Below are positions 27,301 through 51,769 of a stretch of DNA of 64,000 nucleotides, piece after piece. Numbering within the stretch: the stretch's first letter is position 1; each line of letters starts with the position of its first letter. The translations under genes were made by a program, and so were the position numbers. The stretch is from Mizuhopecten yessoensis (taxonomy: Eukaryota). The notes beneath the pieces were generated by a model that was not told the origin of the DNA, searched no databases, and worked only from the letters and a program-made list of their open reading frames with translations. The stretch is taken from the NCBI RefSeq assembly GCF_002113885.1, contig NW_018408827.1, positions 105,553-169,552 on the forward strand, read 5' to 3'.

Positions 27301-30300
27301 ACATAAGTTCCCTTTTATGCATTTAGAGACTGATTCGAGGACCAAAATGGTCGTCATTCAGCAATCATCGATTTTGACAATTACAATTTGCTATCTTTAT
27401 TTTTTCAAGAAGTTTACAGATATTTTTGAAATTTTGATATGTATTGGTCTTCAGAAATGTGTGATCGATCAACACACCATATTACAATAATTAAGATTAT
27501 TTTCAATTTTACAATGCATGTTACACATTATTACAGTGACCGTTCAGGAATAGGTTTTGCTCCAAGGTAACAGAACAGGTAAATTTAAATAACAATTTTT
27601 GACCAGAGTTTTACCTGGCCTGTGCCTGACACATAGAGTTGATATGTAATACCGTATGACCGTTATGAGAACACAACTGGACGTTTAGTATTTGTTATTT
27701 GCATTCGGTTTGGCCTATAGCTCCCCTTCACCTGGAATTTTACACCCCGACGAGTTACGTTAGTGCCCCGGGTGAGGAAAACTGCGGTCCGGGTACCTGT
27801 ACAAAGTGGCTACATTTTTTTTTTATGTTAACCTGTATACAGTACTGTGTTGTAATTTTGCATGTGTCGATTAAGGTCGTTTAAAAAACACCGAAAACAC
27901 CATTTCTAAATCTAAGAAAGTATAAACAGAAAGATAATTTTATAGATGTAACTAGAATATAGAAACATACTTAAAAATCAAGTTTTTCTGTTTAAACACG
28001 AAACTGTTTATATTATTAAGCCATTCCTCAATTTACACCAACCACGATTGCTATTGCACAACGTTCGTCCATCGTGCGCACAAACGTACACCCATCGTTC
28101 GTACACCACACATCGTGTAACGTTGTGTGATCACACAACTGTAAGAGTACATGCATTCATTTGACTCTACTACTTCACCTGATATGTTGATTTCGTTTGA
28201 GGCACATGGTCAATTACAAGTAGCAATGCTTCACAAAATGAAGGTTTTTTCCCTTTGATTTGGTTTTTAAAGTAAATTCTTTTTAAGCATCTTTGGCGCG
28301 GCGACTTTGTATTTGTAAGTAGCTTCCTACGATGCAGATCGACAAAGTCTGCGAAAAAAATACTGTATTTTAAAGCTTTTGAACAGCAATGACCAGTATT
28401 CGTGATTAAACTATTTAAATTGCTTTTCTTTTTAACAAAACAGAGTCATGACGTTTAGCAAGCAGCTTGTTGGCCTTGAATCCTATTTAAGTCCGCTAAC
28501 TTAAAACGACTTTAAGGGGCTAGAGGCGTCCCATGCAAAGGAACCTTGAAAATGAATGATTTTGACTCGCTGAGATTGTGTCTAATAACTGAACGGCATG
28601 GGGTACTAAACAGTTTGCTAAACAATATAATCTCGATCTATGTTCATGGTTACAAGGGACAAATTTGATCCTTTTTTAAAAATAAAATAACGTTGGCAGA
28701 ACTAAGTCCTATTTTCAGAACATTTGGCTGGTTACACTTCTTCGCATTGAATACTACGACGTTTACATGAAGGAGATAACTTTTCTTATATTCAGGACCA
28801 CGTTGGTCAAATCTATTAAAGCCTAAACTATTTCTTCTGGATAGTCAAGAGGCATTGAAAATTGTAAGGGCTACCAGTTTGTTCAAAAAGAATAACCTTG
28901 ACTCACGTTCAGGGTCAATTTCAATCATTGTATACCCTGATGACAGCACGCTTATCAGACTGCAACATGTCGTCCACCAGGTAAAAACTTAGAAACAGGC
29001 TTCAACGTTTGGTACGTGTGATTTCTACATTCATGTCTCAATTACAGAGGACACTGTGTATTTTAAGGCATTCTCCTATAACCAAGGAGATGAACTACAA
29101 CACGTTGTGGACTTACTGGATATTGGTTGTTTAAGGTTTCGTATAAATACAGTTGTGGGACCGCACAACGCACCAAAAATAGCGTGCGCACACCGTGCAT
29201 ACATCGTTCACACACCGTCCGCACATCGTCCACACATGGTGCGCACAACTGTGCGATTTAGCAATCGTTCGCCCCGTTGTGCGCTTCTCTCTGCACAACT
29301 GTGCGATTTGGTATCATTTTTAGATCAAAATTCCGGAATGACAAAAATACGGCTTGTATGCGATAATGTACACTGTGTATATATCTGTAATTTCTCATCA
29401 CAATAATCAAGATTATACAATTTCACAATGCGTGTTACACAGTATTACAGCGACCGTAAGACTGTCAAGAATGGGTTTGGCTCCAAGGTAACAGAACAGG
29501 TAAATAACAATTCCACGAGTGTCCGGAGTTTTACCTGACCTGTGCCTGACACACAGAGCTGATATGCGATACCGTTTGACCGTAATGAATAGTATTTGTT
29601 ATTTGCATTCGTTTGCCTATAGCTCCCCTTCACCTGGATTTTCACACCCGCGGCCTTACCCGACAAGTTACGTAAATGCACCAGGCGGGGGAAAACTACG
29701 GTCCAGGTACATGTACAAAGTGGTTATGTTTACCTGTATACGGGATTGTGTTGTAATTTTACATGTGTCGATTAAGTTTGTTAAAAAACACAGAAAACAA
29801 AATTTCTAAATATAAGAATAAATAGGCAGAAAGATAAGTTTATAGATGTTGCTAGAATATAGAAACATACGTAAACATCAAGTTTATATGTTTAAACACG
29901 AAACCGTATAAATTGTTAAGGCATTCCTCAATTTACACCAACCACGATTGTTATCGCACAACGTCCGTCCATCGTGCGCACATATGTGCGCAAGCAATGA
30001 TCGTTCAGCTTTTTATCGTTCGCCCATCGTGCACACACCGTTCACACACCGTGCACACATCGTGCACACACCGCACATCGTGTAACGTTGTGCGATCCCA
30101 CAACTGTACCACTCACTATGTACGTATTTGTATTTGCACCAGTTCAACCCTGCTGTTCCACTATCGCCAGACGAACCTGGGTTTGTGAAGAACCCGACAT
30201 TGTCCGATAGAATCCACTGTGTTGCATTTGTCCTGGATGGTAGTACTGTGGATGTCATCCCACAGAAAGTGATGAAGCGAATCAAGTCCATGCAATTGCG

Positions 30301-31940
30301 AATGAATCAGAGAGGTAAATTTAGCCATATGATCGAGGGTTCTCAATGTAATTCACAAAGGGGAGAATTTATTTGTTGCGTGTATTTCTTGTAAAACTGC
30401 TAAATATATGTGCATATTTATATAATTTTCGTCTTGAGGATACGCATGTATTTAAAAATGAAATAAAGTTTGAAGATCAGTTAACCATTTGCAAGGGCAT
30501 TTGAACTGATCATGAAGTAGCAACCGTCTCGCCCAAACTTCTCCAAATAACCAAGAGGCATATAGGTTCATAACATTTTTCTGTAACATGCTGCATGACG
30601 AGATGTAAAGTTTGTTTAATAAATTACACTTCACAGCCGTCAAGGTTAAATGATTTAAATGAAACAAAACCTTTCAACAAACTTCTGAATAATCTAGAGA
30701 CCTTTAGTCATGCTGTTTTGCCGATAGCTTGATGGTTTAAAGGGCCGGCTGTGCAAAGTTTTTAAATGAATAGACGTTATTTACTTGCTAGGTCAGAGTG
30801 GTTAGTTTCGTCTAAAATACTTCAAATGGTTTCTGTTAAAATCCATAATACCTAGAATAATGAGATATTGCTTATTGCTTGCTGGGGAAATGGACCATTC
30901 GTTGTTTCAAGGAATTGACCCTGACCAACATTTTAGGTTGCATGAGTACTAAGGTACTGTAGGTAATCATGTAGTAGCATTATACCACTGTGGTCCAAAA
31001 TTATGGTTATAAAGGATAACCATACATATTCACAAATTTATACCGATTTGTATCTGCTTTATAAGATTAATGACAACTGACAAATAGCAACACTATTTAA
31101 GATACATCGTTTTCTTAAAAAATCCAGGAAATTCACAAAAATATATGTAAAGATATCAAACTTTGGACATTGCTTAAAGACTAGCCAGACAAAGTAAAAT
31201 AAATGATAGTCACTGGTGTTGGATGAGTAAGACGAGGAGTTGTGACAGACATTACCTAAATAAAAACAATTCCTTGCCCATGTGTTTATGTAGTTCATGA
31301 CAATCTTATAAAAAGTAATAGTAGTTTGGCATTAAGTAGTATACATTTAGCTGTTTACTAAGGCTATGCCGACTTCATATTGCTATCTCACTGAAATTCC
31401 ATGCCAAAGGCACCCATCACAGCATTCTGCCCGATCATATTATACTGGAAATGGGTTAATTAGTTGTTGCCATTTCCCTATTTACTAAACGTCAAGCAGG
31501 GAATAACAACTACCATTTTGTATCGATGTCATATCTTCATTGTGCAGTCATCTTAACGAATTTATTGAAACTTGTTCTTTACAGGGATTCCCCAGGTTGT
31601 GCTTCTGACGAAAATCGACACAATATGTGAGGAGATCTCAAATGACATCAGCAAAGTGTTTTTCAGTCCAAGGATGAACGACTGTGTGGACAGGGTCGCC
31701 ATGGTCATGGGGCTGCCCAGGTCGCACATACTTCCTGTCAAAAACTACGAATGTGAGGTAGAGCTTGATCAGAACATTAACATTCTGTCACTTCTCAGCC
31801 TCAGACGAATTCTCAATTTCGCTGACGACAACCTGTACAACGAACTGAATGAGATTAAGGCTGGCAAGACGTATAGATTAAGTATAGTTTTGATATTGTT
31901 GTTTATATCTTTTTACTCATTTGTGGCGATACTGATATAA
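21343..31940 (+). CDS. IFI44L: Interferon-induced protein 44-like (TLDc + P-loop GTPase-like), copy A, ~504 aa
   Basis: Coding exons 21343-21877 (TLDc: LLYKISRDG, AFLFRL, PTFG, EVYSV), 23101-23207, 24264-24461 (G1 GQVGSGKS), 26233-26379 (G3 DTRG), 30143-30314 (IHCVAFVLDG) and 31585-31940 (G4-like TKID). All are GT-AG and phase-consistent, totalling 1515 nt. The symbol denotes family, not 1:1 orthology. Confidence 0.9.
22400..22900. repeat. Degenerate 22-bp minisatellite (~22 copies) in copy A intron
   Basis: Unit approximately ataacaaggtaataaccacgcg. Confidence 0.85.
27484..28141 (+). mobile_element. 5'-truncated copy of the ~0.95-kb TA-flanked MITE
   Basis: Aligns to 29400-30106 and ends in the same TIR (…cacacaactg) followed by TA. 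Confidence 0.8.
29150..30106 (+). mobile_element. Non-autonomous Tc1/mariner-like DNA transposon (MITE), 957 bp
   Basis: TIRs cagttgtgggaccgcacaacg / cgttgtgcgatcccacaactg, with TA on both sides (29148-29149, 30107-30108). Further copies at 27484-28141 and 36271-37173. No transposase ORF. Confidence 0.88.
31370..31520 (-). mobile_element. SINE fragment (same family as 15708-16050)
   Basis: tctcactgaaattccatgccaaaggcacccatcac…cattatactg matches 15864-15930. Confidence 0.6.
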
Positions 31941-34960: not shown

Positions 34961-37359
34961 TTTTTAGGTCACCTGAGCTTTGCTCAAGTGACCTATTCTG
35001 ATCGCATTTCGTCCGTCGTCGTCCGTCGTGCGTAAACTTTTTACATTGTCGACTTCTTCTCAGGAACCAAAGGATCATTTTTTTCAAACTTGATCAGAAT
35101 CATCCTTGGTAGATTAGGCTACAAAATTGTAAAATTTGGATTCCTACCCCAACCCCAGGGGCCAGGGAGGGGTCCCAAAGGGAAAATTAATCAATATTTC
35201 AAAAATCTTCTTCTCCAGACTCAGAGGTACTACAGTCAATTTCTCTGCATGGATGGAAAGATCAGCAAGGGCTTTATGTAAATTAAAAAATTCAGTACCC
35301 CGGGCTACCCGTTCTCCCTTGGGGAGGGGGTCACGTTTACTATAGTTTATATAGAGAAATAACACTTTTGGGTATATTTTGTCAATTGTCAGTAGGAAAT
35401 TATTCTTGACTGGTAAGAATCATCCTTGGAGGAAGACGGTATCAAATTGTAAAATTGGGATTTCTGCCCAAAACCCAGGGGCCAGGGCGGGGTCCCAAAG
35501 GGAAAAGTAACCAATATTTCAAAAACCTTCTTCTTGAGACTCAGAGGTACTTCAGTCAATTTCCCTGCATGAATGGAAAGACCATCAAAGGATTTATGTA
35601 AATTGTAAATTTTAGTTCCCCCGGGCTATCCGTTCTCCCTAGGGAAATAACACTTTTTGACATATTTTGTCAATTTTTAGCTGGAAATGATTAATACTTG
35701 GTTAGAATGATTATGATGCCAGATGGCAATTAGATGGTACAAAATGTAGGAGAAAATCAGATCCTGCCACATCCCCAGGGGCTGGAGGAGTGGGGCCTAA
35801 ATGGAGTAAATGGTTAAAAAGTTCAAAAATCTTCTTCATCAGACTCATATGTGTAACAAACAAATATCTTCATGGATAGAAAGGTCCTTGGGTGCATTAT
35901 CTATTTGAAAAAATGATATTTGTCCTTGCCCTATGGCTGGAGAGGTGGGGCCAAAAGGGGGAAATGGCTGATATTTTTAAAAAAAATGCACTCAGGTGGT
36001 AGAAGATTCATATTTCTTTTTTGGGATGCACATTTAGGTACATTATATAAACTGTTAGTTATTTTACCCTTTGGTCATCTGTTCTCCTTGGTTTATATAG
36101 GGAAATAACACTTCTGACTATATCTTGTCCATTTTCAGCAAGAAATAATTCAAACTTGATTGAAATAGTTATAATGAAATTGAAATCAATAAGTATCAGA
36201 AACTAAGATCCTGTCCTATCCCTGGGGTTGGCCAGAGAGGAATATTGGCTAAATAACAATAGATATTATACAGTTGTGGGATCGCACAACGTTACACGAT
36301 GCACGAAGTGCGAACGATAAAAAATTGGACGATCAATGCTTGCGCACATTTGTGCGGACTATGGACGAACGTTGTGCGATAACAATCGTGGTTGGTGTAA
36401 ATTGAGGAATACTTGAACAGCATATACGGTTTCGTACATGTTTTTAAACACATAGACCTGATTATTTATTATGTTTATACATTCTAGCTACATCTATCAG
36501 CTTATCTTTCTGTCTATACTTTCTTAAATTTAGAAATGGTGTTTTCGGTGTTTTTTAAACAACCTAAATCGACACATGTAAAATTACAACACAGTCTTGG
36601 CGATACAGGTCAACAAAGCTACTTTGTACCTGTTCCTGGACCGTAGTTATCCTCACCCGGGACACTTACGTAACTCGCCAAGGTGTGAAAACCAGGTGAA
36701 TGGGAGCTATAGACCAAAACGAATGCAAATAACAAATACTACACGTCCAGTTATGTTTTCATAACGGTCATACGGTATCACATATCAGCTCTTTGTGTCA
36801 GGCACAGGCCAGGTAAAACTCCGGTCACTCATCAAATTGTTATTTACCTGTTCTGTTATCTAGGAGCGAAACCCATTCTTGACAGTCTAACGGTCACTGT
36901 AACACTGCGTAACACGCATTGTAAAAGCGTACATAATCTTAATTATTGTGATGAGAAATTACAGTAATATATACAGTGTACGAGCCTTCCGTATTTTTTT
37001 CATTCCGTAATATTGATCAACAAATTGTACCAAATCGCACAGTTGTGCGGAGAAAAGCGCACAACGGGGCGAAAGATTGTTAAATCGCACAGTTGTGCGC
37101 ACCATGTGTGGACGATGTGCGGACGTTGTGTGAACGATGTATGCACGATGTGCGTTGTGCGGTCACACAACTGTATTTCTCAATAGCAAAATAATGTATT
37201 TGAATAGTTTTTAGAGTTCTTATCTTTTGATGACATGACAAGTATTGTATTTTACTTTGTTTACATGTTGATTTCCACATCACATCTAAACAATAAAATA
37301 AAGCTACCAGTACCTATGCTATAACTCAGGTGACCGCTGAGGCCATTGGGCCTCTTGTT
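34961..37359 (+). mobile_element. Helentron-associated interspersed element (HINE)-like repeat with internal tandem repeats and a nested MITE
   Basis: Starts tttttaggtcacctgag and has the subterminal inverse ctcaggtgacc at 37325-37335. It has a (gtc/gtcc) microsatellite at ~35011, internal repeats (ttcaaaaatcttcttc at ~35198, 35518, 35822) and a 3' palindrome gaggccattgggcctc followed by ttgtt. Confidence 0.8.
36271..37173 (-). mobile_element. TA-flanked MITE, inverted copy of 29150-30106, nested in the HINE
   Basis: Same TIRs, TA at 36269-36270 and 37174-37175; the internal sequence is the reverse complement of the 29150 copy. Confidence 0.88.
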
Positions 37360-38273: not shown

Positions 38274-41200
38274 TTTTATCACATACCTTCCGTATTTGGT
38301 AGAGATCGATACAAAGAATTTATAAACTTTGATATCTTTTGCAAATACCAGTCGCATGACAAGGGGATTCCCATAAAAAAATGCTTGTATTACTATAACA
38401 AAATTCAACAGGTGTGTGATAAATAATGTAACTGGACAAGCTTCCGTCTTGATACATTCTACATTGTATAACCAGACTATCATCCGTCTAGGTTATATAT
38501 CATCCGCCGATCTCTATCGTATAAATGGATACTTCAGCTAGAAGGGAAGTACAGCGTTACTATCCCGCAACTTGGCACCCTTTAAGCAACATGAACTATA
38601 AATAAGATAATCGTTATCAGTTATATGCGTCATATCAAACATCGCTGCCCCAGACCCAACTCTACCACAGTACAGGTGAGCACTTGGTTCGTACTAGAAA
38701 AAGGTATGTCTGACGTCTTTAAATTATTACAGTTTGTTCCAAGGTATAAAGTCGATGTAATACATTGTACTGTATACATGTAGTTGGGTACAATAATTTA
38801 TTATATCAATTAAAACAAAACTTATTTTATTATATCACAATCTATACGAGCCTGAGAACTGTGCGATTTAACAATCGGTCGCCCAGTATTTAATATACGA
38901 TATTTTTCACTTTTTCTAATTCTTCAATACATTATCCACATAAATACATGACTGCTAAACTGTCTATAACAGGGTTGTACTGTCAGGTACAGTACAAGTA
39001 CACGTACGTGGGCAGCTGTACTAAATTGATTGCATGGAATTGATCGCCGGTAAGAGTTTATTTGTTATTTGACTGTTATCAAAACACAATTTGTACTTAC
39101 CTGTATTAAATGTGTCTTTAACGCTTTGTATGGAAATTTCACACCTCCTTCACAGTGGACTTATGATACAAAGCATGTTCCCGTTACCTGGTAATGAACA
39201 GGTAGCGGGTAACAAGTAGGACTGCTTTGTTTACATTGTATCAGACCGTATATCTACACACTTGTCTATTCAAATCAAATCAAATATGTTTCTTCCTATG
39301 ATAAGATATTACAAATAAAAAGAAAAAATGGACATATATTTACATGTCGATTACTTTATCTCCACATCATAATAGTCTCAATTCAGCACTTCCTCTCTTA
39401 TATTAGAGAGAGCATATTACACAACAGTTCAGCTGTAAAATGAGATGGCAGCCTTTTTCAAGATGTCCGCGCCATCTTGAATAAAGTTTACATGTACGAA
39501 AGGTAAAAGACTAATACGAAATTGTGTTTATTTACAAGCCATTCCTTATATATTAAGGGTAGACTGGCCCCGTCTCTAGAATATTGAATTATTAAGAAAA
39601 AGGTTTAACTCAAAACAATTTGATCACTTGGATGTCTGTTCTAAACCAGGGGGAGATAAGCTAGTAGTAAAATGCAGCCGAGAAATTCTTCATAAAAACT
39701 TAGGGGCTGGTAGCCAGTCTAATATTAAGGTTGTAATTTATCTTATTGAGTATCTCATTATGCGCACATTGTGTAAAGTTACATATTATATGTAATGACA
39801 TACTGGTCATTTACTATACAAATGATGTAGCTTGTTTAGGTCGGACGGTTGCTGGCAATCTCCTGCTTTCAAAACATTCCATCGGGGACAGTGTTGTAAC
39901 GATCTCTTTAGATGTATATACACGATATGACAAAGCTACATATATGTATAAACTGTTCTGCAATTTGTACCTGATAGGTGTCAGATAAAATCCTTTTAAT
40001 CAATTAATCGTTTCACTTTGATAGACGATCTATAACTGATCTTGTTAATATAACTGAACAATCCGCCATATTTCAAAATTGATTCGTAAATAAACCTATT
40101 GAATAACAGGTATTTCCAAAATAGTTATATTGATAATTTAATAATTGATTAAAGTATTATGCATTACAATGTGTACAAAAGTAAATACAATATTAAATGT
40201 CCTTCATCTTCGAACACACATACATACTCTCCTGTGCGCATCAAAATATTTACATTTCGCTTTTGATACTATCAGCAAAATGATCTAAGTTATTCAACCT
40301 TAACTATAAAAAACACGCTATTTGTAGGTAACATAATGACGACCAATCTAAAACAACCCGATAAGGTTCAACTTTCCACATGGATTGACCCGTCCAAACG
40401 ACACAATTTTACCTTACTGTACAAGATCAGCCGTGACGGATGTAACGCTCAGACCTTCCATAGTCTCTGTGACAACAAAGGGCCCACAGTCACCGTCCTG
40501 TACAATACAAGTGAATCAGTTTACGGGGCGTATACTGCTGTCAGCTGGCAATCAAATGGTTCTTATAGCATCGACGCAAAAGCATTTTTGTTTAAACTAA
40601 AGTATAATGGTACAGCACATTCCATGAAGTTTCCCAATAAAACGGACGGGAAAAAAGCAATCTATGGACACGCCAACTATGGGCCAACATTTGGAAGTGG
40701 ATATGATTTGTATTGCTTTAGTGGAACTATAAATAAATCCGGAATTATTTTCCCATTGAATGGTTCTGCCACATTAGGATATGCGTACGACATGCAGGGA
40801 CAAGACTACAACACTGTAATGAACGGCCATTTAGAGGTCCTGGATCTTGAGGTTTATAGTGTTCAAGGTGAGTTTACAGTTGTCCTATTACAATAAGGCA
40901 TCACAATCAGTTGTAAAATTGATTAATGTAATAATAAAACAAAAACTGATGTTGTCTATGTCAGGTCTTGATTTCGCAAAGTCCTCCAGTTTGAATTTTT
41001 AGGTAAATTTATCACTTGCAGTCTATATAAATAGCAGCAAATGTATTGACTACATCAATCGTTTATATCCTTGAAATCAAACACACTAAGAATGCATGTG
41101 ATTCATCCGTTTACCTTGATCTCTACTTACAGCACTGCCTACTAAGACGGCTTACTACCAAGCCGTTCAATTGATGTAACAATTATAATGTTCTATCTCG

Positions 41201-41639
41201 AGTTTCCCTGTCTTTAATAGCATCATTCCTGCTCCCAAAGCCTAAGGTTTTCACACGTCGCAATTTTAGCATATTAATGAAGAATATGGGCAAGCTTTAC
41301 GGTCACTGTCATGATCTAACTGGGAAATACGTCATTTCCTTGTGTGACATGGTTTTTGATACGGTTTTGTACATAGTTGGGTAGGATGCAATACGCAAGT
41401 CGCACCATATTTTTGAGAAAACAACAACACGGCCAGACTGGGAACCTCCAAGACAGACACTGTAACAAATTGCGCTACAAGGTCGCCAGCGACCAGTCTA
41501 GTTCCGCTACATTCTTCCCTTCTTTTTTTCATAGTCTTCTTTTTTGAAGACAATGCTATTTATAACTGAGGTTCGGGTATCCCCTTGCTTAATGTTCACA
41601 TAATAATTGAAACAAGGGTTGGCTACTGTTACCACCGTT

Positions 41640-41735
41640 ACAGAAGATGAAGAACGCATGGCCAGACCAGGATTAGAAGCTGGAACCTCCAAACTCGAGT
41701 CGGACGCTTTAACCTATTGGCCTATCTGGTCGCCG
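41640..41735 (-). mobile_element. tRNA-derived SINE head fragment
   Basis: Minus strand reads ggcgaccagataggccaataggttaaagcgtccgactcgagtttggaggttccagcttctaatcctggtctggcca (A/B-box-like). A related fragment is at ~41430-41505. Confidence 0.55.
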
Positions 41736-44700
41736 ACGATCAAACCAGTCCGATTTCTATACAAATACCATATAAATGTTTGAGTTTTGTTTTTTTCTGT
41801 AATCAATCCATAATACCATAGTTAGCCCTGTTTCTATTTTTTTTTTCTATACAAGGACTGATTGACCCATAAGGAAACCCCATTTTATCGTGACCTAATT
41901 TTGCAAAACCAAAAAAAATGGTCCGTTTACTCCTGCCTAAGCATAAAAGCAGGGGCATATTTCCTTTCTACAATCTACTAAGTCGTTTAACCTTTAACCC
42001 ATTTGGTTTGCTAGTGATTCTAGTGTGCTTTTTTGTCTATTTTTCGTACAGACGACCAAAACATATTTTTTTTATATTGTGAAGAGAGACAGCTTAGTGA
42101 TAATATCAGAGTTGGATGCGGGCTGATGTAGCAGAAAGCAGTTATGTTATGACTCATCGGACAATATCAACGCTTGAAATATAATTAAATATACACAGTT
42201 TGATTGATATATTCAGGAAGCATAAAATTAAATTTAAAACAAAAATGAAATGATTATTTGCCAATGTTTTTGTTGAGGTTTAATTCAAATATAGTGTTTT
42301 TCCAACAGATACAAATATGATACAATTTTATGTACAAATGATGAAATTTCTACATTGTATTGGCCTAAATTGACATACTGGGACACATTTACGGAATGAA
42401 CGTAATTTTTAAGGGTCTATGCTATCTTGTTATACCATTTATAAACAGCGAATACATATTGTTAGCAAACATGATGAGTAGACCATCTCTACAGTTTTAT
42501 ATTCTTTTGTAAAACATGTATAAAGAACGAATTCCTTGAATAGCTCCAAACGATGTATTCCTATTTATGTTCTTGATACGGAATGAAAGTGAGATAATAT
42601 ATTTGTTATAATCATTAAGGAAAATTCCATGACAAAAACAACCATAAGAAGTAAACAAAGTGATCTTCCGATTTCTGCTTAATGGTAAACACTCCATGTT
42701 TCGTGTTCCATGTCAAATCTGCATGTACCAACAACGCCTGCGTCCTCTAAAATCCTATTAAATTCTATTAAAGATATGGTTCTGTTTTCATTTCTACTAG
42801 TTGAATCCGTGGTATATTTTTTATATATATTTTTTCAACTCGACGTGTACAAAGGTTATGTGATATATACGGAGACATTTACTGAACTGGTTTCCTTTAC
42901 TTAAAGATATGTATGTTAGCATTAAAATATATAAAGGATGTGTAGAATACATACGATACTTCAGTAATTGTATGATCGCAAGTTGTTTACACATACTGCC
43001 GAGCAATCTGAAAAAGACATGGCAGAATGACCCACAGAAACAATATAGATGTATGTGGCTTATGTTTTAACAAAAACAACAAAGTACATATTTGTTGCAA
43101 CTCTGCACATGCTATAGAAAAATCTTAAAATAAACAATTGGAACGAACTTATTTTTTTTTATATCAAAAACCTTTAATTGTTACAGAATACATGTTTTGA
43201 TGTTTTCACAAAGTGGGCGTCGTGACGTTAACTACAGTATCGATTAACAGAACATATGTTGACTATGGTATATAAAATTATAAATGGTTTATAAACTCAA
43301 AACAGCAAGGACTTTTTCGTTGTATTTTTGTTATTTATTAATTGCAGTGCAAATATCTAGAAGAATATCACACGATTAAATAAGTTACTAAATTATTTTC
43401 CTCAAATCAAACACAAATCACACTTTTTACATGAGCAATACTTCGTAAGAAATCACAATAATAAATGACATTATAATAACTAACCCTACTTATGCATACA
43501 AAAATGATCAGCATATATTTTTGCAAAATGATAACTGCAAATCGAAGATAAGTAACTATTCCCAACATTATGAATATCGTCTTTCCTTTTGATTGTTCAC
43601 ATTTCCAGAACGCATGCTCCTTCAAAAGCCCTGGATCCGGAACGTTGATTGGAGCCAGAAGGTAAGCCAGCCTAAACACCTTTTATTCTACCATTACCTA
43701 TTGAAAGTCCTTTCACTATAATATCATTCCATTGTGCTGTTTGTTACGTCATTATATAATATAGTATGCGTTGTATTCAATTTTTACTGTGTTGCACTGT
43801 GTTTTATATTTTCAATCAATTAAGTGTTATTGATATATTTTATTCGTTTCAGTTTGAGCAGGAGATAAAGGAAAAAGTGGCCACCTATAAACCATTACCC
43901 GGATTGGACCTCCAGCAGAGGAGGATCCTGTTGGTCGGTCAGGTCGGGGCAGGGAAGTCTAGCTACTTCAACACCGTCAACTCCATCTTCCGAGGGCATA
44001 TTAGCAGCCAGGCCAACGTTGGAACTACGGAACAACATAGTCTTACAACATCCGTTAGTGAAAATGATAGCATTAAACCAAGGATAATGTAGAATTACAG
44101 TTACAAAGCATGTACTCTTTTTAACATTAAAAAAGATATTTTATCGATAGGAAAAATGATTCCATTATCGGTATCTTAACAAAACATCCACTTGGAAAAT
44201 GCATTTCAATTTGAAGTTAAGCCATACATGTATATTTCCCATTTGCCTCTTCTATTGATTCACACACAGTTTATGCCTCAGGTATAGAGACAGCGATATG
44301 CTTGTCCAAAGCCGGACTACATAACTCAATACAGGCTTTAATTTTGTTTACTTGTTCACGAATTTTAGTACCGGATGTATGAAATACATGACGGATATGG
44401 CAGCAAAACTTTCAACTTTCGGTTATGCGACACACGTGGCCTAGAAGAGAACCAAGGTATTGATGATCAAGATATTTGTTATTTACTTGATGGTCACGTG
44501 CCTGACAGGTATCAGGTATGTGTTTAAATTACTTATTATGTCTTGCCTTTTCCTTGTAAGCAAAAATATAATCATTAATTCAATTTTACTTGTCTTTTAT
44601 ATATTGAATGATTAATGGAAGATAAAACACGTGAACCCCGTCCCATTTTTTTTATCAACATTACCTATTCAACTTCAACACTCTTTCAAGAAGCTCAATT

Positions 44701-47188
44701 AGTATCCCATTCTCCTACCCAGACAAACAATGAATGACCGATATGTTACATCATTGTGTAGCGTTTTGTATATATAAACACCTGATTTTATAATATGGAA
44801 TGTTAGCAACGCATTATCAAATCATTACTAGGAACATCAAGTATGTAAGCATATTTGTCAAAGTGTTATTTGTTTGATACAGAGAGCCAAGCAAAGTACA
44901 TATCTCAGGGCACCATTTAGCCATTTCGTACATTTAGGACTCCTTAGGTCAAATAATGAATATAAAGTATGAATATATTCAGATACATATGCTGATGAAA
45001 CCCCTTATAACGTTACAACTTATAATTAACAACTTTTGGCTACAACAAGTTCATGTATCATAGTCTAAAACTAGTATATATTGCAAACCTTGGGGAATAA
45101 TCATCTACCCACAAGCAGACCCAACCATCTTGTTACGTAAACAAGTTACCAGAAAGTAAGAAATGTGAACGCACTCATTCAAATGTTTTGTTTATCGATG
45201 CTGAAAACCCCACAAATTTAACCATTTAACACCACTACATGGCCATATTCTTCCATTTAGCTTCTAGTTATTACATTGTAATAGTAAAGTACTAGTAGAT
45301 CGTCACACTGTTTTCAGGGTTTGTCGTTCGAACAATGTTCTCATTACGAGACGTGTATAAACTCGAGAGGGACTGCATCACAAACTGTTTGCCATTTGTT
45401 AAAATCTATTTAAATGACTATTTTTGATAACGAAATATCTAATCATTAGCTATTCCTGATGTATTTTTACGCTCAAAAATAATTGTTTTTCTTATAATAT
45501 TTTCATGATTTAATAATGATTTGTATTTGACGGTCTTGATTCTTACGCGGGGTACTTTTTAAATGAAAGTAGTGACGTCACCTCATCTTTCAACTGTTTT
45601 CTAGTATTCCAACACTTAAAACACTTGCTAATGGATTTATAATGTGGAAGGTAGCGTACAGAAGTAAACATATGCTAATGTTGTTATCATGTATTGATGT
45701 TGTCACAGCTATTGAAGATATCGGTCTGAGGTTTACTTAATCAGAATAGACACCATCCCGTCTGTGTGAAATAGATATGACCAATAACTGTTCCGATGAT
45801 GCGAAAGCATGCAAGTAAATGGTACCGATAGTCTATCTCAATTAAATCCGCTGACCCTGTTTCTAAAATAAACATTTTGTGCAACGGTATCATCTCAACA
45901 CTGCTTTCGCAACGCCTGAAATTACAAAAACAAATCACTTGTTCGAAGCTCCAATTTTTGCACGTCTTTTAGAAATATCAGGCAACGCCCTCTTTTATGA
46001 TAAAACAACAGAATATTTCAATTCGCACGTGGCACTCTTTAGAATCTGTATTCTTCGGAACTAGTGATATTTATATGACGTTCAGCAAACAGTCAAAGTT
46101 TTATAGATGTATAAATTATGCCCTTGTTTATGTTATCCTCAGTTCAACCCCTCTATACCAATATAGCCTGACGCCCTGGGATTCGTGAAAAATCCAATGC
46201 AGTCTGATAAAATCCACTGTGTGGCTTTTGTCCTGGACGCTAGTGATGTTGACGACATTCCCGAGAAAGTCCTGGAACGGATTAAAGCAATGCAGCCGCG
46301 GATGAACCATAGAGGTAATTCATTTTACATAAGTATCCACATTCCTCGCTATATATTGGTTAATGCCATTCAAATATTGTTATTATTTAACACCCGCAAT
46401 TTATCGAAAACTTCTCACGGAACTTTTTCGAAAACATCAGGAACCGGATTTAAAAATATATGCAAACGCTGTTTTGAATGATTTTAACGGCGGTCATTTC
46501 AGAGTCTCAAAACTAACTCTAAATGATTAATCGTATATGATGCAATAATACATTCCATAGTTGAGCGAACTTGAATAGTATCTCAATTTCGACAATCAGA
46601 GCCGAATATAGCCAGGTTTGCTATCTTACCGGAAAGGGGCATAGAGCACATGTATGCATGCCCATCTGTACATGTGTGAAGTGTCATTAGTGTTCATAAA
46701 GTGGTTTTTAGGGGTTCAATGGTATTTTATACATACCACATTTGATCAACATTGGACAATTAATGAAGGGTAAGAGTATAACGTTTCAGTAAGCCATGAT
46801 ATGTAAGTTTAATTGTTTGCAGAATTAATATCTAGGCTATGGTCATAAAAAAAACACGTACAGGGTTTCCTTTTAGGTTCAATTCGTCCTGGCATTAATA
46901 AAGGTAGAGTTGAAAAGAGGCTTCATCTTGAATTCGAGATTCCACTTTTGCAATCACTTTTTCTCAAGATATTGGTTATAAAGGGACCAGTAAGGACATC
47001 ATTTTTATTTTTACTTATGTTCATTTTTTTCGTAGGTCAAATTTCAGGACAAATTCCTCAATATATGTAATTGCTAAGATATGAGGTATATATATGTGTA
47101 TATATATATCAAATATTATCATTAAATAAATATTCAGTTGATATTTAAAAGTTTTAGAGATATTGCTAAATAAATCGATGAACAAGTA

Positions 47189-48963
47189 GGAATGAATACA
47201 GTGTATAGTGACAATGAAAAGGAATGGATACAGTGTATAGTGACAATAAATAGGAATGGATACAGTGTAAAGTGACAATACACAGGAATGGATACAGTGT
47301 ATAGTAACGATAAACAGGAGTGGATACAGTGTATAGTGACAATACACAGAAATGGATACAGTGTATAGTGACAATACACAGGAATGGATACAGTGTATAG
47401 TAACAATAAACAGGAATGGATACAGTATATAAGTATAGTGACAATAAAAAGGAATGGATACAGTGTATAGTGACAATGAAAAGGAATGGATACAGTGTAT
47501 AGTTACAATACACAGGAATGGATACAGTGTATAGTGACAATAAAAAGGAATGGATACAGTGTATAGTGACAATGAAAAGGAATGGATACAGTCTAAAGTG
47601 ACAATACACAGGAATGGATACAGTGTATAGTAACGATAAACAGGAATGGATACAGTATATAGTGACAATACACAGGAATGGATACAATGTATAGTGACAA
47701 TAATCAGGAATTGATACAGTGTAAAGTGACAATACATAGGAATGGATACAGTGTATAATGACCATAAAAAGGAATGGAAACAGTGTAAAGTGAAAATAAA
47801 CCGGAATGAATACAGTGTATAGTGACGATAAACAGGAATGGATACAGTATATAGTGACAATACACAGGAATGGATACAGTGTATAGTGACCATACACAGG
47901 AATGGATACAGTCTATAGTGACAATACACAAGAATGGATACCGTATATAGTAACGATAAACAGGAATGGATACAGTGTATAGTGACAATACACAGGAATG
48001 GATACAGTCTATAGTGACGATAAACAGGAATGGATACAGTATATAGTGACAATACACAGGAATGGATACAATGTATAGTGACAATAATCAGGAATGGATA
48101 CAGTGTAAAGTGACAATACACAGGAATGGATACAGTGTATAATGACCATAAAAAGGAATGGATACAGTGTAAAGTGAAAATAAACCGGAATGAATACAGT
48201 GTATAGTGACGATAAACAGGAATGGAAACAGTATATAGTGACAATAATCAGGAATGGATAAGTGTATAATGACCATAAAAAGGAATGGGTACAGTGTAAA
48301 GTGAAAATAATCAGGAATGGATACAGTGTAAAGTGACAATTCACAGGAATGGATACAGTGTAAAGTGACAATACACAGGAATGGATACAGTGTATAATGA
48401 CCATAAAAAGGAATGGATACAGTGTAAAGTGAAAATAAACCGGAATTGATACAGTGTATAGTGACGTTAACAGGAATGGATACAGTGTATAGTGACAATA
48501 AACAGGAATGGATACAGTATATAGTGACAATAATCAGGAATGGATACAGTGTATAATGACCATAAAAAGGAATGGATACAGTGTAAAGTGAAAATAAACC
48601 GGAATGAATACAGTGTATAGTGACGATAAACAGGAATGGAAACAGTATATAGTGACAATAATCAGGAATGGATACAGTGTATAATGACCATAAAAAGAAA
48701 TGGATACAATGTAAAGTGAAAATAAACCGGAATTGATACAGTGTATAGTGACGTTAACAGGAATGGATACAGTGTATAGTGACAATAAACAGGAATGGAT
48801 ACAGTGTATAGTGACGATAAACAGGAATGGATACAGTATATAGTGACAATAATCAGGAATGGATACAGTATATAGTGACAATAAACAGGAATGGATACAG
48901 TATATAATGACAATAAACTGGAATGGATACAGTCTAATGTGACAATAAACAGGGATGGAAACA
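47189..48963. repeat. 32-bp minisatellite, ~55 copies, in the last intron of copy B
   Basis: Unit ggaatggatacagtgtatagtgacaatacaca. It explains the 407-aa and other minus-strand repetitive ORFs. Confidence 0.97.
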
Positions 48964-49050
48964 TGAACGCTTTGGTAATTACTACAAAAAACTCAATCAA
49001 TGTTTTTTTCAATGAAATCAAATAATTTTCCAAGGTTGACTTATATTTTT

Positions 49051-49288
49051 GGAGAATGGGATACTAACTGAGCTTCTTGAAAGAGTGTTGAAGTTGAATA
49101 GGTAATGTTGATAAAAAAAAATGGGACGGGGTTCACGTGTTTTATCTTCCATTAATCATTCAATATATAAAAGACAAGTAAAATTGAATTAATGATTATA
49201 TTTTTGCTTACAAGGAAAAGGCAAGACATAGTAAGTAATTTAAACACATACCTGATACCTGTCAGGCACGTGACCATCAAGTAAATAA
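49051..49288 (-). repeat. Near-perfect inverted duplicate of 44479-44715
   Basis: Base-by-base reverse complement with about 2 substitutions and 1 extra A. It includes the last 37 nt of the DTRG exon and its donor site. Confidence 0.95.
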
Positions 49289-51769
49289 ATATATTTTTTG
49301 CTGGTTTAAACAAATAGATAAATAAGCCGAATGTGTTGCATCTTGCTTTATGCATCTTGCACTAAAAGCAGTTTCATTTAAGTTCTGGTAAAAATTCAAT
49401 ATGATCTGCTGACATATAACTACAATGTAGTACAAAACTAGCGAAAGGAAACAAAGAAAGGCACAGAATACTTCCATCCCGCTACTTAGTGTAATCATAA
49501 ATTTGTAAAAACAGATGTCATTATTAAATTTGCGCTGACGTGCCCATGCCATTATTAAATTTGCGCTGCCGTGCTCACATTCTTTATTTTTAGATTTCAT
49601 GAAACAGATTATCAAACACAATACATAGAGTTGTAACTACATGTAGTATATATATATATATATATATCTAAACTCTAAACAAGATACCATTTTTTTCTTA
49701 AACTTAACCCCCTCATTCTTTTATGATAGAACTGTTTGATCCAAAAAGATCACCTCGTTTCATAAAGATCTGTCCCTATTATATATTTCAGCTATGGCTT
49801 TATTAAGAAAGGTGTTGTTATATTCCAATAAGTGAGTTTCTGATGTAAGATTGAATCAATTCTGTTCCGTTATGAGTAGTTTGTAAATTCCATTCTTTCC
49901 TTCACAGGTATACCCCAAGTGGTATTGCTGACTAAAATCGATGAAATATGTGAGGAGACTTCAGAAGACCTCAGCAATGTCTTTTTCAGCACAGTGGTAA
50001 AAGAGTGCGTAGACAAGGTTGCTTCGTTGATGGGTCTGCCCCGGTCACACATTCTTCCTGTCAAAAACTACGAATGTGAGGTAGAGCTTGATCAGAACAT
50101 AAACATTCTGGCACTCCTCAGTCTCAGACGAATTCTTAATTTTGTCGACGACTTTCTGTTCAACAAATCTGATGAGATCGCAGCTGAAAAAATGAAACGC
50201 TTGAAAGTTAGTGACTAGACCTAGTACATAGAGGACCTATGGTATAGTTAGTATCATTTGTTTTTAGGTAAATCAAGCTTTCAAGATAATAGCTGTTGAA
50301 CTAAAAACGATTTTCTAAAAGCATCCGTTTATTTATTTTTTCTTGTGAAAAAAACACTTTCAAAATACCTTAAATGACAGGCTATGGATTAATCAAATTT
50401 GTAAGTTTTAACAGAATCAATGGCTACTCATTTGATGATAACAAATGTGTTTCATCCAGTGACACGTGTAGACGATGCTCTCTATTTTCTACATCTTCAT
50501 GTATCAACACTGTACATATGAACCTAGATATCAACTTATGTTGTAAATGCTACACTTTTCAACGACATATATGATTAAACCTTACACATCGATATTGATG
50601 GCCTTCGATGTTGGTGGCTTATTTTTTACCCGATGGTATAACGTTCATTTTTTAAAAGATATAAAAAACATCATATTGATTGAATTTAAAAGCGTATTCG
50701 ATCTATGACATTGTCAACTTTTATGCTGATCTTTGTTATACGTTGATTTTGTGATAAGGTATGCAAACAAGGTTGTGTCACATTTAAAGAAATATTTATT
50801 AAACTGAGAAGCTAAGTTTCTTATCTACATGTACTTAAATGTCTTACAATGCATCAAGATGGTAATGCAGCCAGTACAATTCGTGGATACCAATATTGAG
50901 GTGACTGAGGTGACAATGGTGACGGGGGTAAAGTCTTATTCAAGTTAGTCAGCAGGGAAAACATATATACAACACAGCAGATGAGGTCATAGTGCAGCTT
51001 ATAAAGGGACTATTGCCGTATATTTCATACCTAGGAAACAGGAAATCGGTGCTCTAAATGGTTAAATAGACTGAAAATAAAGAAACATGCGTAGCTATTC
51101 CGTCAACTTTGTTGTATATTAACATTTCTTTCGAAATTGAAAATCTCGGCTGGTGTTTGTATATCGTTTATCTCGAAGATTGCCAATTTGATCACATGAT
51201 CTGTCACGTGACAATTTTGTTTTCTCTCCGTCAAAACTAAAATAGATTCCGAAGTTAATGTAAACACAGACACGTGTGTCAGATTTTACACCTTGTGTTC
51301 CCTTTTTATACACTTTTAGTTGCAGGATAATACAATATAATTTTAAAACCAATCAATTACAATAATCACAAATAATTAAGGCAAGTTGGTCATGGTCTGC
51401 GCTGTCGACGAAATTTGTGGAGGCTTAATAGGGGTATCACTAATCTTTTTGAGCGGCACATATTGATAAACATTAATCAACTTCTTTTTAAGTTAACTAT
51501 TGGAGTGTGATCAAGGAGAATATATTTCCATCGTGTTAATAACCTCTACTGTCTAAATAATAAAATACAATCAGCATGCTGCTCTATACCAACAAATTCA
51601 TAACCACAATTTATTTGATAGGAAAATGATTTCTCTTTAATAATGACTCCAACATACTTTCAAACAATGTTTAAATAGTGCATTCAATATGATGACTTTC
51701 AGAATTAGTTATATTTGTCTCAAAATTCAAAGCAACTTTGTGAATGCTCATCTTAACTCTCAGTAAGGC

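What the first reader, a model, noticed from the sequence alone, without database searches (positions are those of the whole stretch)
44479..49288. 237-bp near-perfect inverted duplication that captures a splice donor and loops out the exon carrying the premature stop in copy B
Seen: 49051-49288 is the reverse complement of 44479-44715 (about 99% identical). That segment is gene-specific sequence, the last 37 nt of the DTRG exon, its GT donor and 200 nt of intron, not a transposon. The arms bracket exon 46143-46314, which holds the TAG, and the second arm sits ~90 bp after the 32-bp minisatellite. Inference: the pre-mRNA could fold a ~237-bp duplex that masks the donor and favours skipping or back-splicing (a 172-nt circRNA). 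It could also supply an ADAR/Dicer/RLR substrate from within an antiviral gene, and small RNAs from the exonic part would partly match copies A and C. Skipping does not restore frame (phase 0 to phase 1).
Basis: partly seen in the sequence, partly recalled or inferred. Interest (0 to 1): 0.7.

Follow-up and report, generated by a model that had tools for sequence, protein, structure and literature searches.

The report
Young polymorphic inverted intragenic duplication
A 238-base backwards copy of an exon-intron boundary sits 4.3 kb downstream in the same scallop IFI44-like immune gene; it is real and present in some animals but not others, yet the one transcript seen is spliced normally, so it looks like a recent DNA-repair by-product and not a proven RNA switch.

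Summary
49051-49288 is the reverse complement of 44479-44715, with 2 mismatches and 1 T-run indel. These are the only two copies in the 988-Mb genome. Arm 1 is the last 37 nt of the DTRG exon, its GT donor and 200 nt of intron, in paralog B of a tandem cluster of TLDc + P-loop GTPase (IFI44-like) genes. The bracketed 172-nt exon carries a TAG.

It is not a mis-assembly. Contigs of an independent DNA run cross the left junction (87+48 nt) and reach the right one with the k-1 limit of 30 nt. A run from a third study is heterozygous for an allele that lacks 49047-49295 and has nine other letters there.

Arm 2 is flanked by a 9-bp direct repeat, found at 2 of 63,662 positions by chance. The junctions have 0-2 nt of microhomology. 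It is therefore a young, still segregating insertion of a local inverted copy.

On the RNA side, one RNA contig reads DTRG exon + 172 nt + last exon, which is normal splicing with the exon kept. No other paralog has such a piece in 264 kb scanned. The scan noted a similar exon-end echo in a CDKL gene elsewhere in this genome, also with normal splicing.

The parts
44479..44715 (+). Arm 1, the source: last 37 nt of the DTRG exon (44479-44515), GT donor (44516-44517) and 200 nt of the following intron
   Evidence: The exonic part aligns in frame with paralogs A and C, so this is the original copy.
49051..49288 (-). Arm 2: inverted copy of arm 1, inserted in the intron between the TAG exon and the last exon
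   Evidence: Junction contigs occur in independent DNA runs X1 and X14.
49042..49050 (.). Left copy of the 9-bp direct repeat TATATTTTT that flanks arm 2
   Evidence: Read. A flanking repeat of this kind occurs at 2 of 63,662 positions in the window.
49290..49298 (.). Right copy of the 9-bp direct repeat, one extra A (49289) after arm 2
49047..49295 (.). The 249 nt absent from one haplotype of run X14, which has CGCAACTTC in their place (presence/absence polymorphism)
   Evidence: tables 5 and 5c. Depth is 6.66 for the allele without arm 2, 8.1 for the right junction of the allele with arm 2, and 14.4 in the flank.
44369..44515 (+). DTRG (G3 motif) exon of paralog B, 147 nt, ends in phase 0
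46143..46314 (+). 172-nt exon bracketed by the arms, with a premature TAG at 46164-46166
   Evidence: The 170 unplaced letters plus the ambiguous AG in RNA contig X15 record 18 match its length.
47188..48963 (.). 32-bp minisatellite, 55 copies, 87 bp upstream of arm 2
   Evidence: Relatives at about 70% identity lie on at least 6 other contigs.
49908..50218 (+). Last coding exon (G4 motif TKID) of paralog B. The 3' UTR runs at least to 50565 in RNA contigs.
43853..44053 (+). P-loop (GQVGAGKSS) exon of paralog B
40336..40867 (+). TLDc-domain exon of paralog B, starting at the ATG
   Evidence: PF07534, E 7.7e-22

Best explanation
This is a real, evolutionarily young structural variant that still segregates in the population. 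A 237/238-bp piece of genomic DNA spanning the DTRG-exon/intron boundary of IFI44-like paralog B was copied in inverted orientation into the next-but-one intron, 4.3 kb downstream and 87 bp past a 1.8-kb minisatellite.

The junctions are nearly blunt: 0-2 nt of possible microhomology and one extra A. The insert is framed by a 9-bp duplication of the target. I therefore read the origin as a local DNA repair or replication accident. Either a nearby fragment was captured at a staggered break, or a two-step template switch returned 9 bp behind its point of departure. It was not transposition. This part is inferred.

At the RNA level the arms can pair only in transcripts that still hold the intron after the DTRG exon when arm 2 is transcribed, more than 4.3 kb later. 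Most molecules therefore splice normally, which is what the one assembled transcript shows. A minority could form a 237-bp duplex and be edited or back-spliced. That is inferred and untested.

In the reference haplotype the host gene copy already carries a nonsense codon, so the variant is most likely a neutral passenger.
For:: two arms about 99% identical with sharp ends; only two copies in the genome; arm 1 sits at the position and in the frame conserved in paralogs A and C, so it is the source.

DNA run X1 (study P1): one contig covers 48964-49098, which is 87 nt of flank plus 48 nt of arm including the arm-2-specific letter at 49068. Another contig covers 49259-49638. The arm interior has twice the flank depth (29.9 vs 15.5), as expected for two collapsed arms.

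DNA run X14 (study P3): one contig skips 49047-49295 at depth 6.66, the arm 2 right junction has depth 8.1, and the flank has 14.4. That is a heterozygote; the right flank is single-copy, so the skipping contig is an allele and not a paralog.

the 9-bp flanking direct repeat is rare by chance (2/63,662; 1/4,629 in AT-rich context); two of the three arm differences (49113, 49231) vary between runs, so the arms differ no more than alleles do.

RNA run X15 record 18: 66+37 nt of the DTRG exon, then 170 unplaced nt (+AG = 172), then 49906-50083. This is normal exon inclusion at depth 11.5; no other antisense exon fragment in 264 kb covering 11 paralog loci.
Against: The allele without arm 2 is not a clean empty site. 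It has nine letters (CGCAACTTC) that occur nowhere else in the window. The exact pre-insertion sequence, and even the polarity (insertion versus later imprecise deletion), are therefore not proven. No outgroup was available.

The right-junction contigs reach only 30 nt into the arm, which is the k-1 limit of the contigs. The filled left junction of X14 was not among the pieces listed.

Normal splicing rests on one contig of one RNA run, and contigs drop rare isoforms. That library also holds intron pieces at depth 2-5, so pre-mRNA (or DNA) is present, and a minor duplex-dependent product is not excluded. The 170 unplaced letters were identified as the TAG exon by length only.
Confidence: 0.72

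Rival explanations
1. The hairpin acts at the RNA level. It masks the donor and promotes skipping or circularisation of the 172-nt exon, and/or it supplies a long dsRNA for ADAR, Dicer or RLR from inside an antiviral gene, with a biological consequence.
For:: the inter-arm duplex is -399 kcal/mol against about -40 for either arm alone; no competing inverted repeat of 20 nt or more lies within 43500-50500. The geometry (200 intronic nt upstream and 238 nt downstream of one exon) is the one known to favour back-splicing (established knowledge); in oysters Ifi44 is among the genes constantly hyper-edited by ADAR (PMC9044936); copy B is transcribed, and intron pieces are present in RNA run X15.
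Against:: the assembled transcript is normally spliced with the exon included. No RNA contig covers the arm 2 interior, and raw RNA run X23 gave a single read, so expression there is very low. The intron holding most of arm 1 can be removed long before arm 2 is made. The variant is polymorphic and unique among 11 paralog loci, so it is not a conserved device. Skipping shifts the frame (172 nt), and the host copy has a TAG. Matches in trans to A and C are poor.
Confidence: 0.12
2. Assembly artefact: reads of the exon/intron boundary were placed wrongly, in reverse, beside the hard-to-assemble minisatellite.
For: Arm 2 lies 87 bp from a 1.8-kb minisatellite. The genome is highly fragmented (82,659 contigs).
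Against:: contigs of two DNA runs from two studies other than the 2016 one that probably yielded the assembly (X1 of P1, X14 of P3) carry the junctions. The arm interior has double depth. One run is heterozygous for presence and absence, with depths that add up. There are no Ns between the arms.
Confidence: 0.01
3. The insert came through RNA: a fragment of unspliced pre-mRNA was reverse-transcribed into a nicked A/T-rich target by a LINE enzyme (target-primed reverse transcription), which leaves a target-site duplication.
For:: a 9-bp target duplication. Read in the insert's own orientation the duplicated target is AAAAATATA, it starts with an A-run, and one extra base sits at the 5' junction. 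All of this is common at LINE-mediated insertions (established knowledge).
Against: There is no poly(A) tail beyond the five As that belong to the target. The source has no A-run after its 3' end (...CATTCTCC then TACCCAGAC). The insert keeps its intron. A retrocopy landing 4.3 kb from its source, in the same gene of a 1-Gb genome, would be a large coincidence, whereas local DNA mechanisms predict proximity.
Confidence: 0.07
4. Reversed polarity: arm 2 is the older state, and the X14 allele is a later imprecise deletion of it with a 9-nt filler, as if it were an excision or repair footprint.
For:: the allele lacking arm 2 keeps 5 and 4 nt of the two direct-repeat copies and has nine unrelated letters between them, which looks like a repair footprint. 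Long inverted repeats are known to be unstable.
Against: The deletion ends would have to fall within 4 and 7 nt of the arm ends by chance. The arms are about as similar as alleles are, so the duplication is young in any case. Both copies of the direct repeat show the same joined form TATATTTTT, so the difference in the nine letters predates the duplication or lies on the other lineage.
Confidence: 0.12

Closest known systems
Intronic complementary sequences that flank circularised exons (Alu pairs in human genes, the inverted repeats around mouse Sry, Drosophila laccase2); from established knowledge
   Same: Complementary stretches lie in the introns on both sides of a single exon, and there is no competing pair within either intron.
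   Different: Here the upstream arm also includes 37 exonic nt and the donor of the preceding exon. The arms are a gene's own sequence and not transposons. The pair is polymorphic. No back-splice read has been looked for, let alone found.
Template-switch / microhomology-mediated replication errors and templated insertions that create inverted copies of nearby sequence (MMBIR, PMC2621351; short-range template switches, PMC7954356)
   Same: An inverted copy of sequence a few kb away in cis, small changes at the target (9 bp duplicated, and nine letters different in the other allele), next to a repeat array that may stall forks.
   Different: The junctions show 0-2 nt of microhomology and a 1-nt filler, which is more like end joining. 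The copied tract (237 nt) and the distance (4.3 kb) are larger than in short-range switches and far smaller than in the human CNV cases.
Hairpin-RNA or young miRNA loci born by inverted duplication of a gene's own sequence (plants; Drosophila hpRNA); from memory, not tested
   Same: An inverted duplicate of genic sequence that could give a long perfect hairpin with the potential to yield small RNAs matching the parent family.
   Different: The arms are 4.3 kb apart inside the parent gene's own pre-mRNA. Only 37 nt are exonic. Identity to the paralogs is too low. No small RNAs are known.
ADAR hyper-editing of Ifi44 transcripts in the Pacific oyster (PMC9044936)
   Same: The same kind of gene in another bivalve is a constant hyper-editing target, which implies dsRNA within or across such genes.
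   Different: The structure responsible in the oyster is not described there, and editing was not assessable here.
Exon-end echo hairpins in a CDKL intron of this same genome (earlier scan note s1-517139)
   Same: Copies of an exon's last letters lie near its own splice site, able on paper to fold over the donor. Splicing was reported normal, and the feature was read as a by-product of local duplication.
   Different: Those copies are decayed and lie just inside the adjacent intron. This one is near-perfect, 4.3 kb away and polymorphic. I did not re-test that note.

Membership tests
IFI44 / IFI44L-like proteins (host gene) | N-terminal TLDc domain | tested here: met
   PF07534, E 7.7e-22, 78 bits against a cut-off of 24.5. 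Searches agree.
IFI44 / IFI44L-like proteins (host gene) | C-terminal P-loop GTPase with G1, G3 and G4 motifs | tested here: inconclusive
   The motifs GQVGAGKSS, DTRG and TKID are visible in the exon translations. Pfam gives only sub-threshold AIG1 and RsgA hits on the P-loop exon.
IFI44 / IFI44L-like proteins (host gene) | Sequence relatives annotated as IFI44-like | tested here: met
   among 103 bivalve and cnidarian relatives of the TLDc exon, one is named 'interferon-induced protein 44-like [Saccostrea cucullata]' (53% identity). The best hit is an uncharacterised Mizuhopecten yessoensis protein (63%). The names are automatic annotations.
IFI44 / IFI44L-like proteins (host gene) | Induction by virus or interferon-like signalling | not tested
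   Only literature on oysters was seen.
Transposable element / MITE | Many dispersed copies | tested here: not met
   two copies in 987.6 Mb, one of them the gene's own exon/intron boundary.
Transposable element / MITE | Terminal inverted repeats or other element ends | tested here: not met
   The ends GGAGAATGG... and ...AGTAAATAA share no terminal repeat. The whole insert is gene-derived.
Transposable element / MITE | Target-site duplication | tested here: met
   A 9-bp direct repeat, rare by chance. This feature alone does not make it an element.
LINE-mediated retrocopy | Poly(A) tail and loss of introns | tested here: not met
   The insert keeps 200 nt of intron and has no tail beyond the A-run of the duplicated target.
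Template-switch / MMBIR product | Inverted copy of nearby sequence in cis | tested here: met
   the source lies 4.3 kb upstream in the same gene.
Template-switch / MMBIR product | Microhomology at both junctions | tested here: inconclusive
   There are 0 nt against the reference. Up to 2 nt are possible at the left junction if the source was the X14 allele whose flank matches from 49049 (table 7). There is a 1-nt filler at the right junction.
Inversion by staggered breaks (inverted duplications at inversion breakpoints) | The segment between the duplicates is inverted relative to the ancestral order | tested here: not met
   The bracketed exon keeps the gene's orientation, as in paralogs A and C, and is spliced into the mRNA. 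The allele without arm 2 joins the same flanks in the same orientation.
circRNA-producing exon with flanking complementary introns | Complementary sequences in both flanking introns | tested here: met
circRNA-producing exon with flanking complementary introns | Back-splice junction reads (46314>46143) | not tested
ADAR hyper-editing substrate | Clusters of A-to-G differences in RNA but not DNA of the same animal | tested here: inconclusive
   no RNA contig covers the arm 2 interior in X15, and there is one read in X23. Intron coverage is patchy elsewhere too, so the hole says nothing.
Assembly artefact | Junctions absent from independent data | tested here: not met
   the junctions are present in X1 and X14.

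The most novel reading that the evidence does not exclude
The allele with arm 2 makes part of the pre-mRNA of an IFI44-like gene fold into a 237-bp perfect duplex. That duplex would be hyper-edited by ADAR and/or would drive a 172-nt exon circle. Because the allele without arm 2 still segregates, the species would offer a natural on/off genotype for asking how a bivalve handles self dsRNA made inside an antiviral-response gene.
Probability: 0.12. Interest if true: 0.55.

Novelty: new member of a known kind. Interest (0 to 1): 0.3.

Why it matters
The finding shows, with independent read data, a small local inverted duplication caught while still polymorphic, with both junctions and the alternative allele readable. 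That is useful for learning how such hairpin-forming variants arise in the highly polymorphic genomes of bivalves. If the duplex affects RNA, carriers and non-carriers would form a natural experiment on intron pairing, circular RNA and self-dsRNA handling in an invertebrate immune gene. As it stands, the evidence points to a neutral variant in a gene copy that already carries a stop codon.

Tried and rejected
Mis-assembly is rejected by the junction contigs and the heterozygote. A transposon or MITE is rejected by copy number and the lack of element ends. Inversion by staggered breaks is rejected because the middle segment is not inverted.

I asked whether this is a recurrent feature of the gene family. 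I fetched 200 kb more, mapped exons and scanned for inverted repeats. Arm 2 is the only antisense exon-derived piece, so it is a one-off.

I looked for a nearby template for the nine letters CGCAACTTC of the other allele and found none in the window.

The ESM Atlas gave only 'TLDc domain' for the first exon and nothing usable for the last exon. The findings look-up near the site returned only an unrelated promoter-motif note.

Some things were deliberately not done. I did not send the 1.8-kb minisatellite to read laying, because the tool states that it turns away long repeats.
Full report
**The observation**

The repeat finder and my own alignment confirm that 49051-49288 is the reverse complement of 44479-44715. 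The arms are 237 and 238 nt. They differ by two substitutions (44536 paired with 49231; 44698 paired with 49068) and one extra T in a homopolymer (49113). Similarity ends abruptly at both ends.

A search of the window's whole genome finds exactly these two places (987.6 Mb, 82,659 contigs; window = C5500:105553-169552). The right flank is single-copy. There are no Ns between the arms.

**The host gene**

The window holds three tandem paralogs on the + strand: A at 21343-31886, B at 40336-50215, and C from 56760. They are about 70-77% identical in protein, exon by exon.

The first recognisable exon is a TLDc domain (Pfam PF07534, E 7.7e-22; atlas). The next exons carry a P-loop (GQVGAGKSS), DTRG and TKID, but Pfam gives only sub-threshold GTPase hits.

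A word-indexed homology search with the TLDc exon finds 103 relatives, mostly bivalve. The best is an uncharacterised Mizuhopecten yessoensis protein at 63% identity. One relative is named interferon-induced protein 44-like (Saccostrea, 53%). TLDc plus GTPase is the IFI44 architecture; IFI44 is listed as a TLDc protein in PMC5614904. I therefore call the gene IFI44-like, and the organism most likely a pectinid scallop. The assembly statistics fit my memory of the Yesso scallop assembly, which I did not test.

The exons were searched apart by reference. I left out the step of joining them into a spliced model.

The exon limits of B, taken from splice motifs and paralog alignment, are:
- TLDc exon: 40336-40867
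- P-loop exon: 43853-44053
- DTRG exon: 44369-44515, with the donor GT at 44516-44517
- 172-nt exon: 46143-46314
- last exon: 49908-50218

The 172-nt exon reads F N P S I P I and then TAG (46164-46166), where copy A has TCG. Since 172 = 3x57+1, skipping it shifts the frame.

**Is arm 2 real?**

I used the one run search on 43750-50250 and the one read-laying run on 48964-50700. I chose a stretch that starts after the minisatellite because the tool states that it turns away long repeats.

DNA run X1 (study P1, not the 2016 study P2 that probably yielded the assembly) shows the following:
- One contig covers 48964-49098, which is 87 nt of left flank plus 48 nt of arm. It runs through the arm-2-specific letter at 49068 and stops exactly k-1 beyond it.
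- Another contig covers 49259-49638, which is 30 nt of arm (the k-1 limit) plus the right flank.
- The arm interior has a depth of 29.9 against 15.5-16.5 in the flanks, as expected when the two arms collapse into one contig.
- The loose ends at 49051 and 49288 are the flanks of arm 1, read in reverse.

DNA run X14 (study P3) shows a contig at depth 6.66 that skips 49047-49295 and has CGCAACTTC in their place. It also shows an arm 2 right-junction contig at depth 8.1. The flank depth is 14.4. This animal is heterozygous.

Arm 2 is therefore genuine and a presence/absence polymorphism.

**How young, and how made?**

Two of the three differences between the arms (49113, 49231) take the other state in X14's collapsed contig. 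The arms therefore differ no more than alleles do.

Arm 2 is framed by TATATTTTT (49042-50 and 49290-98), with one extra A at 49289. A flanking repeat of this kind occurs at 2 of 63,662 positions in the window, and at 1 of 4,629 positions in AT-rich context, that one being this site.

There is no microhomology between the source ends and the target in the reference. One X14 allele of the arm 1 flank matches two letters further (loose end at 49049), so up to 2 nt is possible at the left junction.

Several origins can be set aside:
- The insert has no terminal repeats, no poly(A) tail, and keeps its intron. This speaks against a transposon and against LINE-mediated retrocopying. So does the source lying 4.3 kb away in the same gene.
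- Inversion through staggered breaks would also leave inverted duplicates. It is excluded because the middle segment keeps the gene's orientation.

I conclude that a local repair or replication accident made it. Either a nearby fragment was captured at a staggered break, or a double template switch returned 9 bp behind its departure point. The 1.8-kb minisatellite 87 bp away is a possible trigger; this is inference.

One point is unresolved. The allele without arm 2 is not the clean site predicted by a simple target duplication, and its nine letters occur nowhere else in the window. Both copies of the direct repeat share the joined form. The nine-letter difference is therefore either older than the duplication or lies on the other lineage. 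The alternative, less likely reading is that the X14 allele is a later imprecise deletion.

**RNA**

The inter-arm duplex is predicted at -399 kcal/mol, against about -40 for each arm alone. No competing inverted repeat lies in 43500-50500.

The evidence from reads is thin, and what there is shows normal splicing. In RNA run X15, contig 18 (451 nt, depth 11.5) consists of:
- 66+37 nt of the DTRG exon. The 37 nt lie on arm 2 in reverse, hence the tool's 'opposite strands' joint.
- 170 unplaced letters.
- 49906-50083.

Since 49906-49907 (AG) equal the last two letters of the 172-nt exon, this is DTRG exon + 172 nt + last exon. That is normal splicing with the exon included.

Intron pieces occur in that library at depth 2-5 (48964-49067; 49689-49900). 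There are none inside arm 2, but also none in 49312-49659, so the hole is not specific to the arm. The raw-read RNA run X23 gave one read.

Kinetically, the intron holding 200 nt of arm 1 (1,627 nt long) can be removed well before arm 2 is transcribed.

The exonic 37 nt match A and C at 31/37 and 30/37, with exact runs of 11 and 8 nt. This is poor for small-RNA targeting in trans.

As context, oyster Ifi44 is among the genes constantly hyper-edited by ADAR (PMC9044936).

**Is it a family habit?**

The cluster on C5500 has at least seven tandem paralogs, and four more loci lie elsewhere. I fetched 200 kb more. Arm 2 is the only antisense exon-derived piece. It is also the only long, near-perfect inverted repeat that touches a gene model. 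It is a one-off.

An earlier scan note describes decayed exon-end echoes in a CDKL intron of this genome, with normal splicing (s1-517139). I did not re-test it. It fits the idea that local duplication near exon ends recurs here as a mutational by-product.

**Verdict**

The structural interpretation is confirmed and extended: the variant is polymorphic and carries a target duplication. The functional interpretation is unsupported so far, and what little RNA evidence exists goes against skipping as the main outcome. This is a new member of a known kind, and of modest interest.

Noticed in passing
window 27481-30033 and 36300-37154: A set of inverted repeat pairs (64-174 nt, 84-93% complementary) links the intron of paralog A before its 172-nt-type exon with the A-B intergenic region. 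These are probably two copies of a mobile element in opposite orientation.
   Followed up: no
window 47188-48963: The 32-bp minisatellite has relatives at about 70% identity in arrays on at least six other contigs (C3738, C314, C2066, C76736, C168, C5497). It is therefore a dispersed satellite family, perhaps element-borne.
   Followed up: partly
window 40867/43853: The TLDc exon ends in phase 1, but the P-loop exon starts in phase 0 in both copies A and B. A small unrecognised exon probably lies in the 3-kb intron between them.
   Followed up: no
L018:9317-9667 and L019:2728-2868 (G000:C5500:178869-179219 and 192280-192420): Pieces 93% identical in protein to copy B's TLDc and P-loop exons lie downstream of copy C, amid long N runs. 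This is a partial or gap-broken B-like paralog.
   Followed up: no
window 50054-50099: In RNA run X15 a 46-nt contig in the last exon has depth 388 against about 22 around it. This stretch is shared with much more highly expressed paralogs.
   Followed up: no
window 50124-50700: DNA run X14 has no contig laid over the end of the last exon and the 3' UTR, although X1 and RNA run X15 do. It may be a divergent or deleted haplotype, or a filter effect. The tool warns that a hole proves nothing.
   Followed up: no
window 11440-12218 and 22376-22883: There are further minisatellites. One is 26 bp x 30 at 92% identity. The other is 22/44/66 bp and lies in the intron of copy A between the TLDc and P-loop exons.
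   Followed up: no
L023:1548-1756 and L023:6258-6466 (G000:C5549): A 209-nt inverted repeat at 91% identity lies 2 kb beyond the 3' end of the compact paralog on contig C5549 and does not overlap its exons.
   Followed up: no
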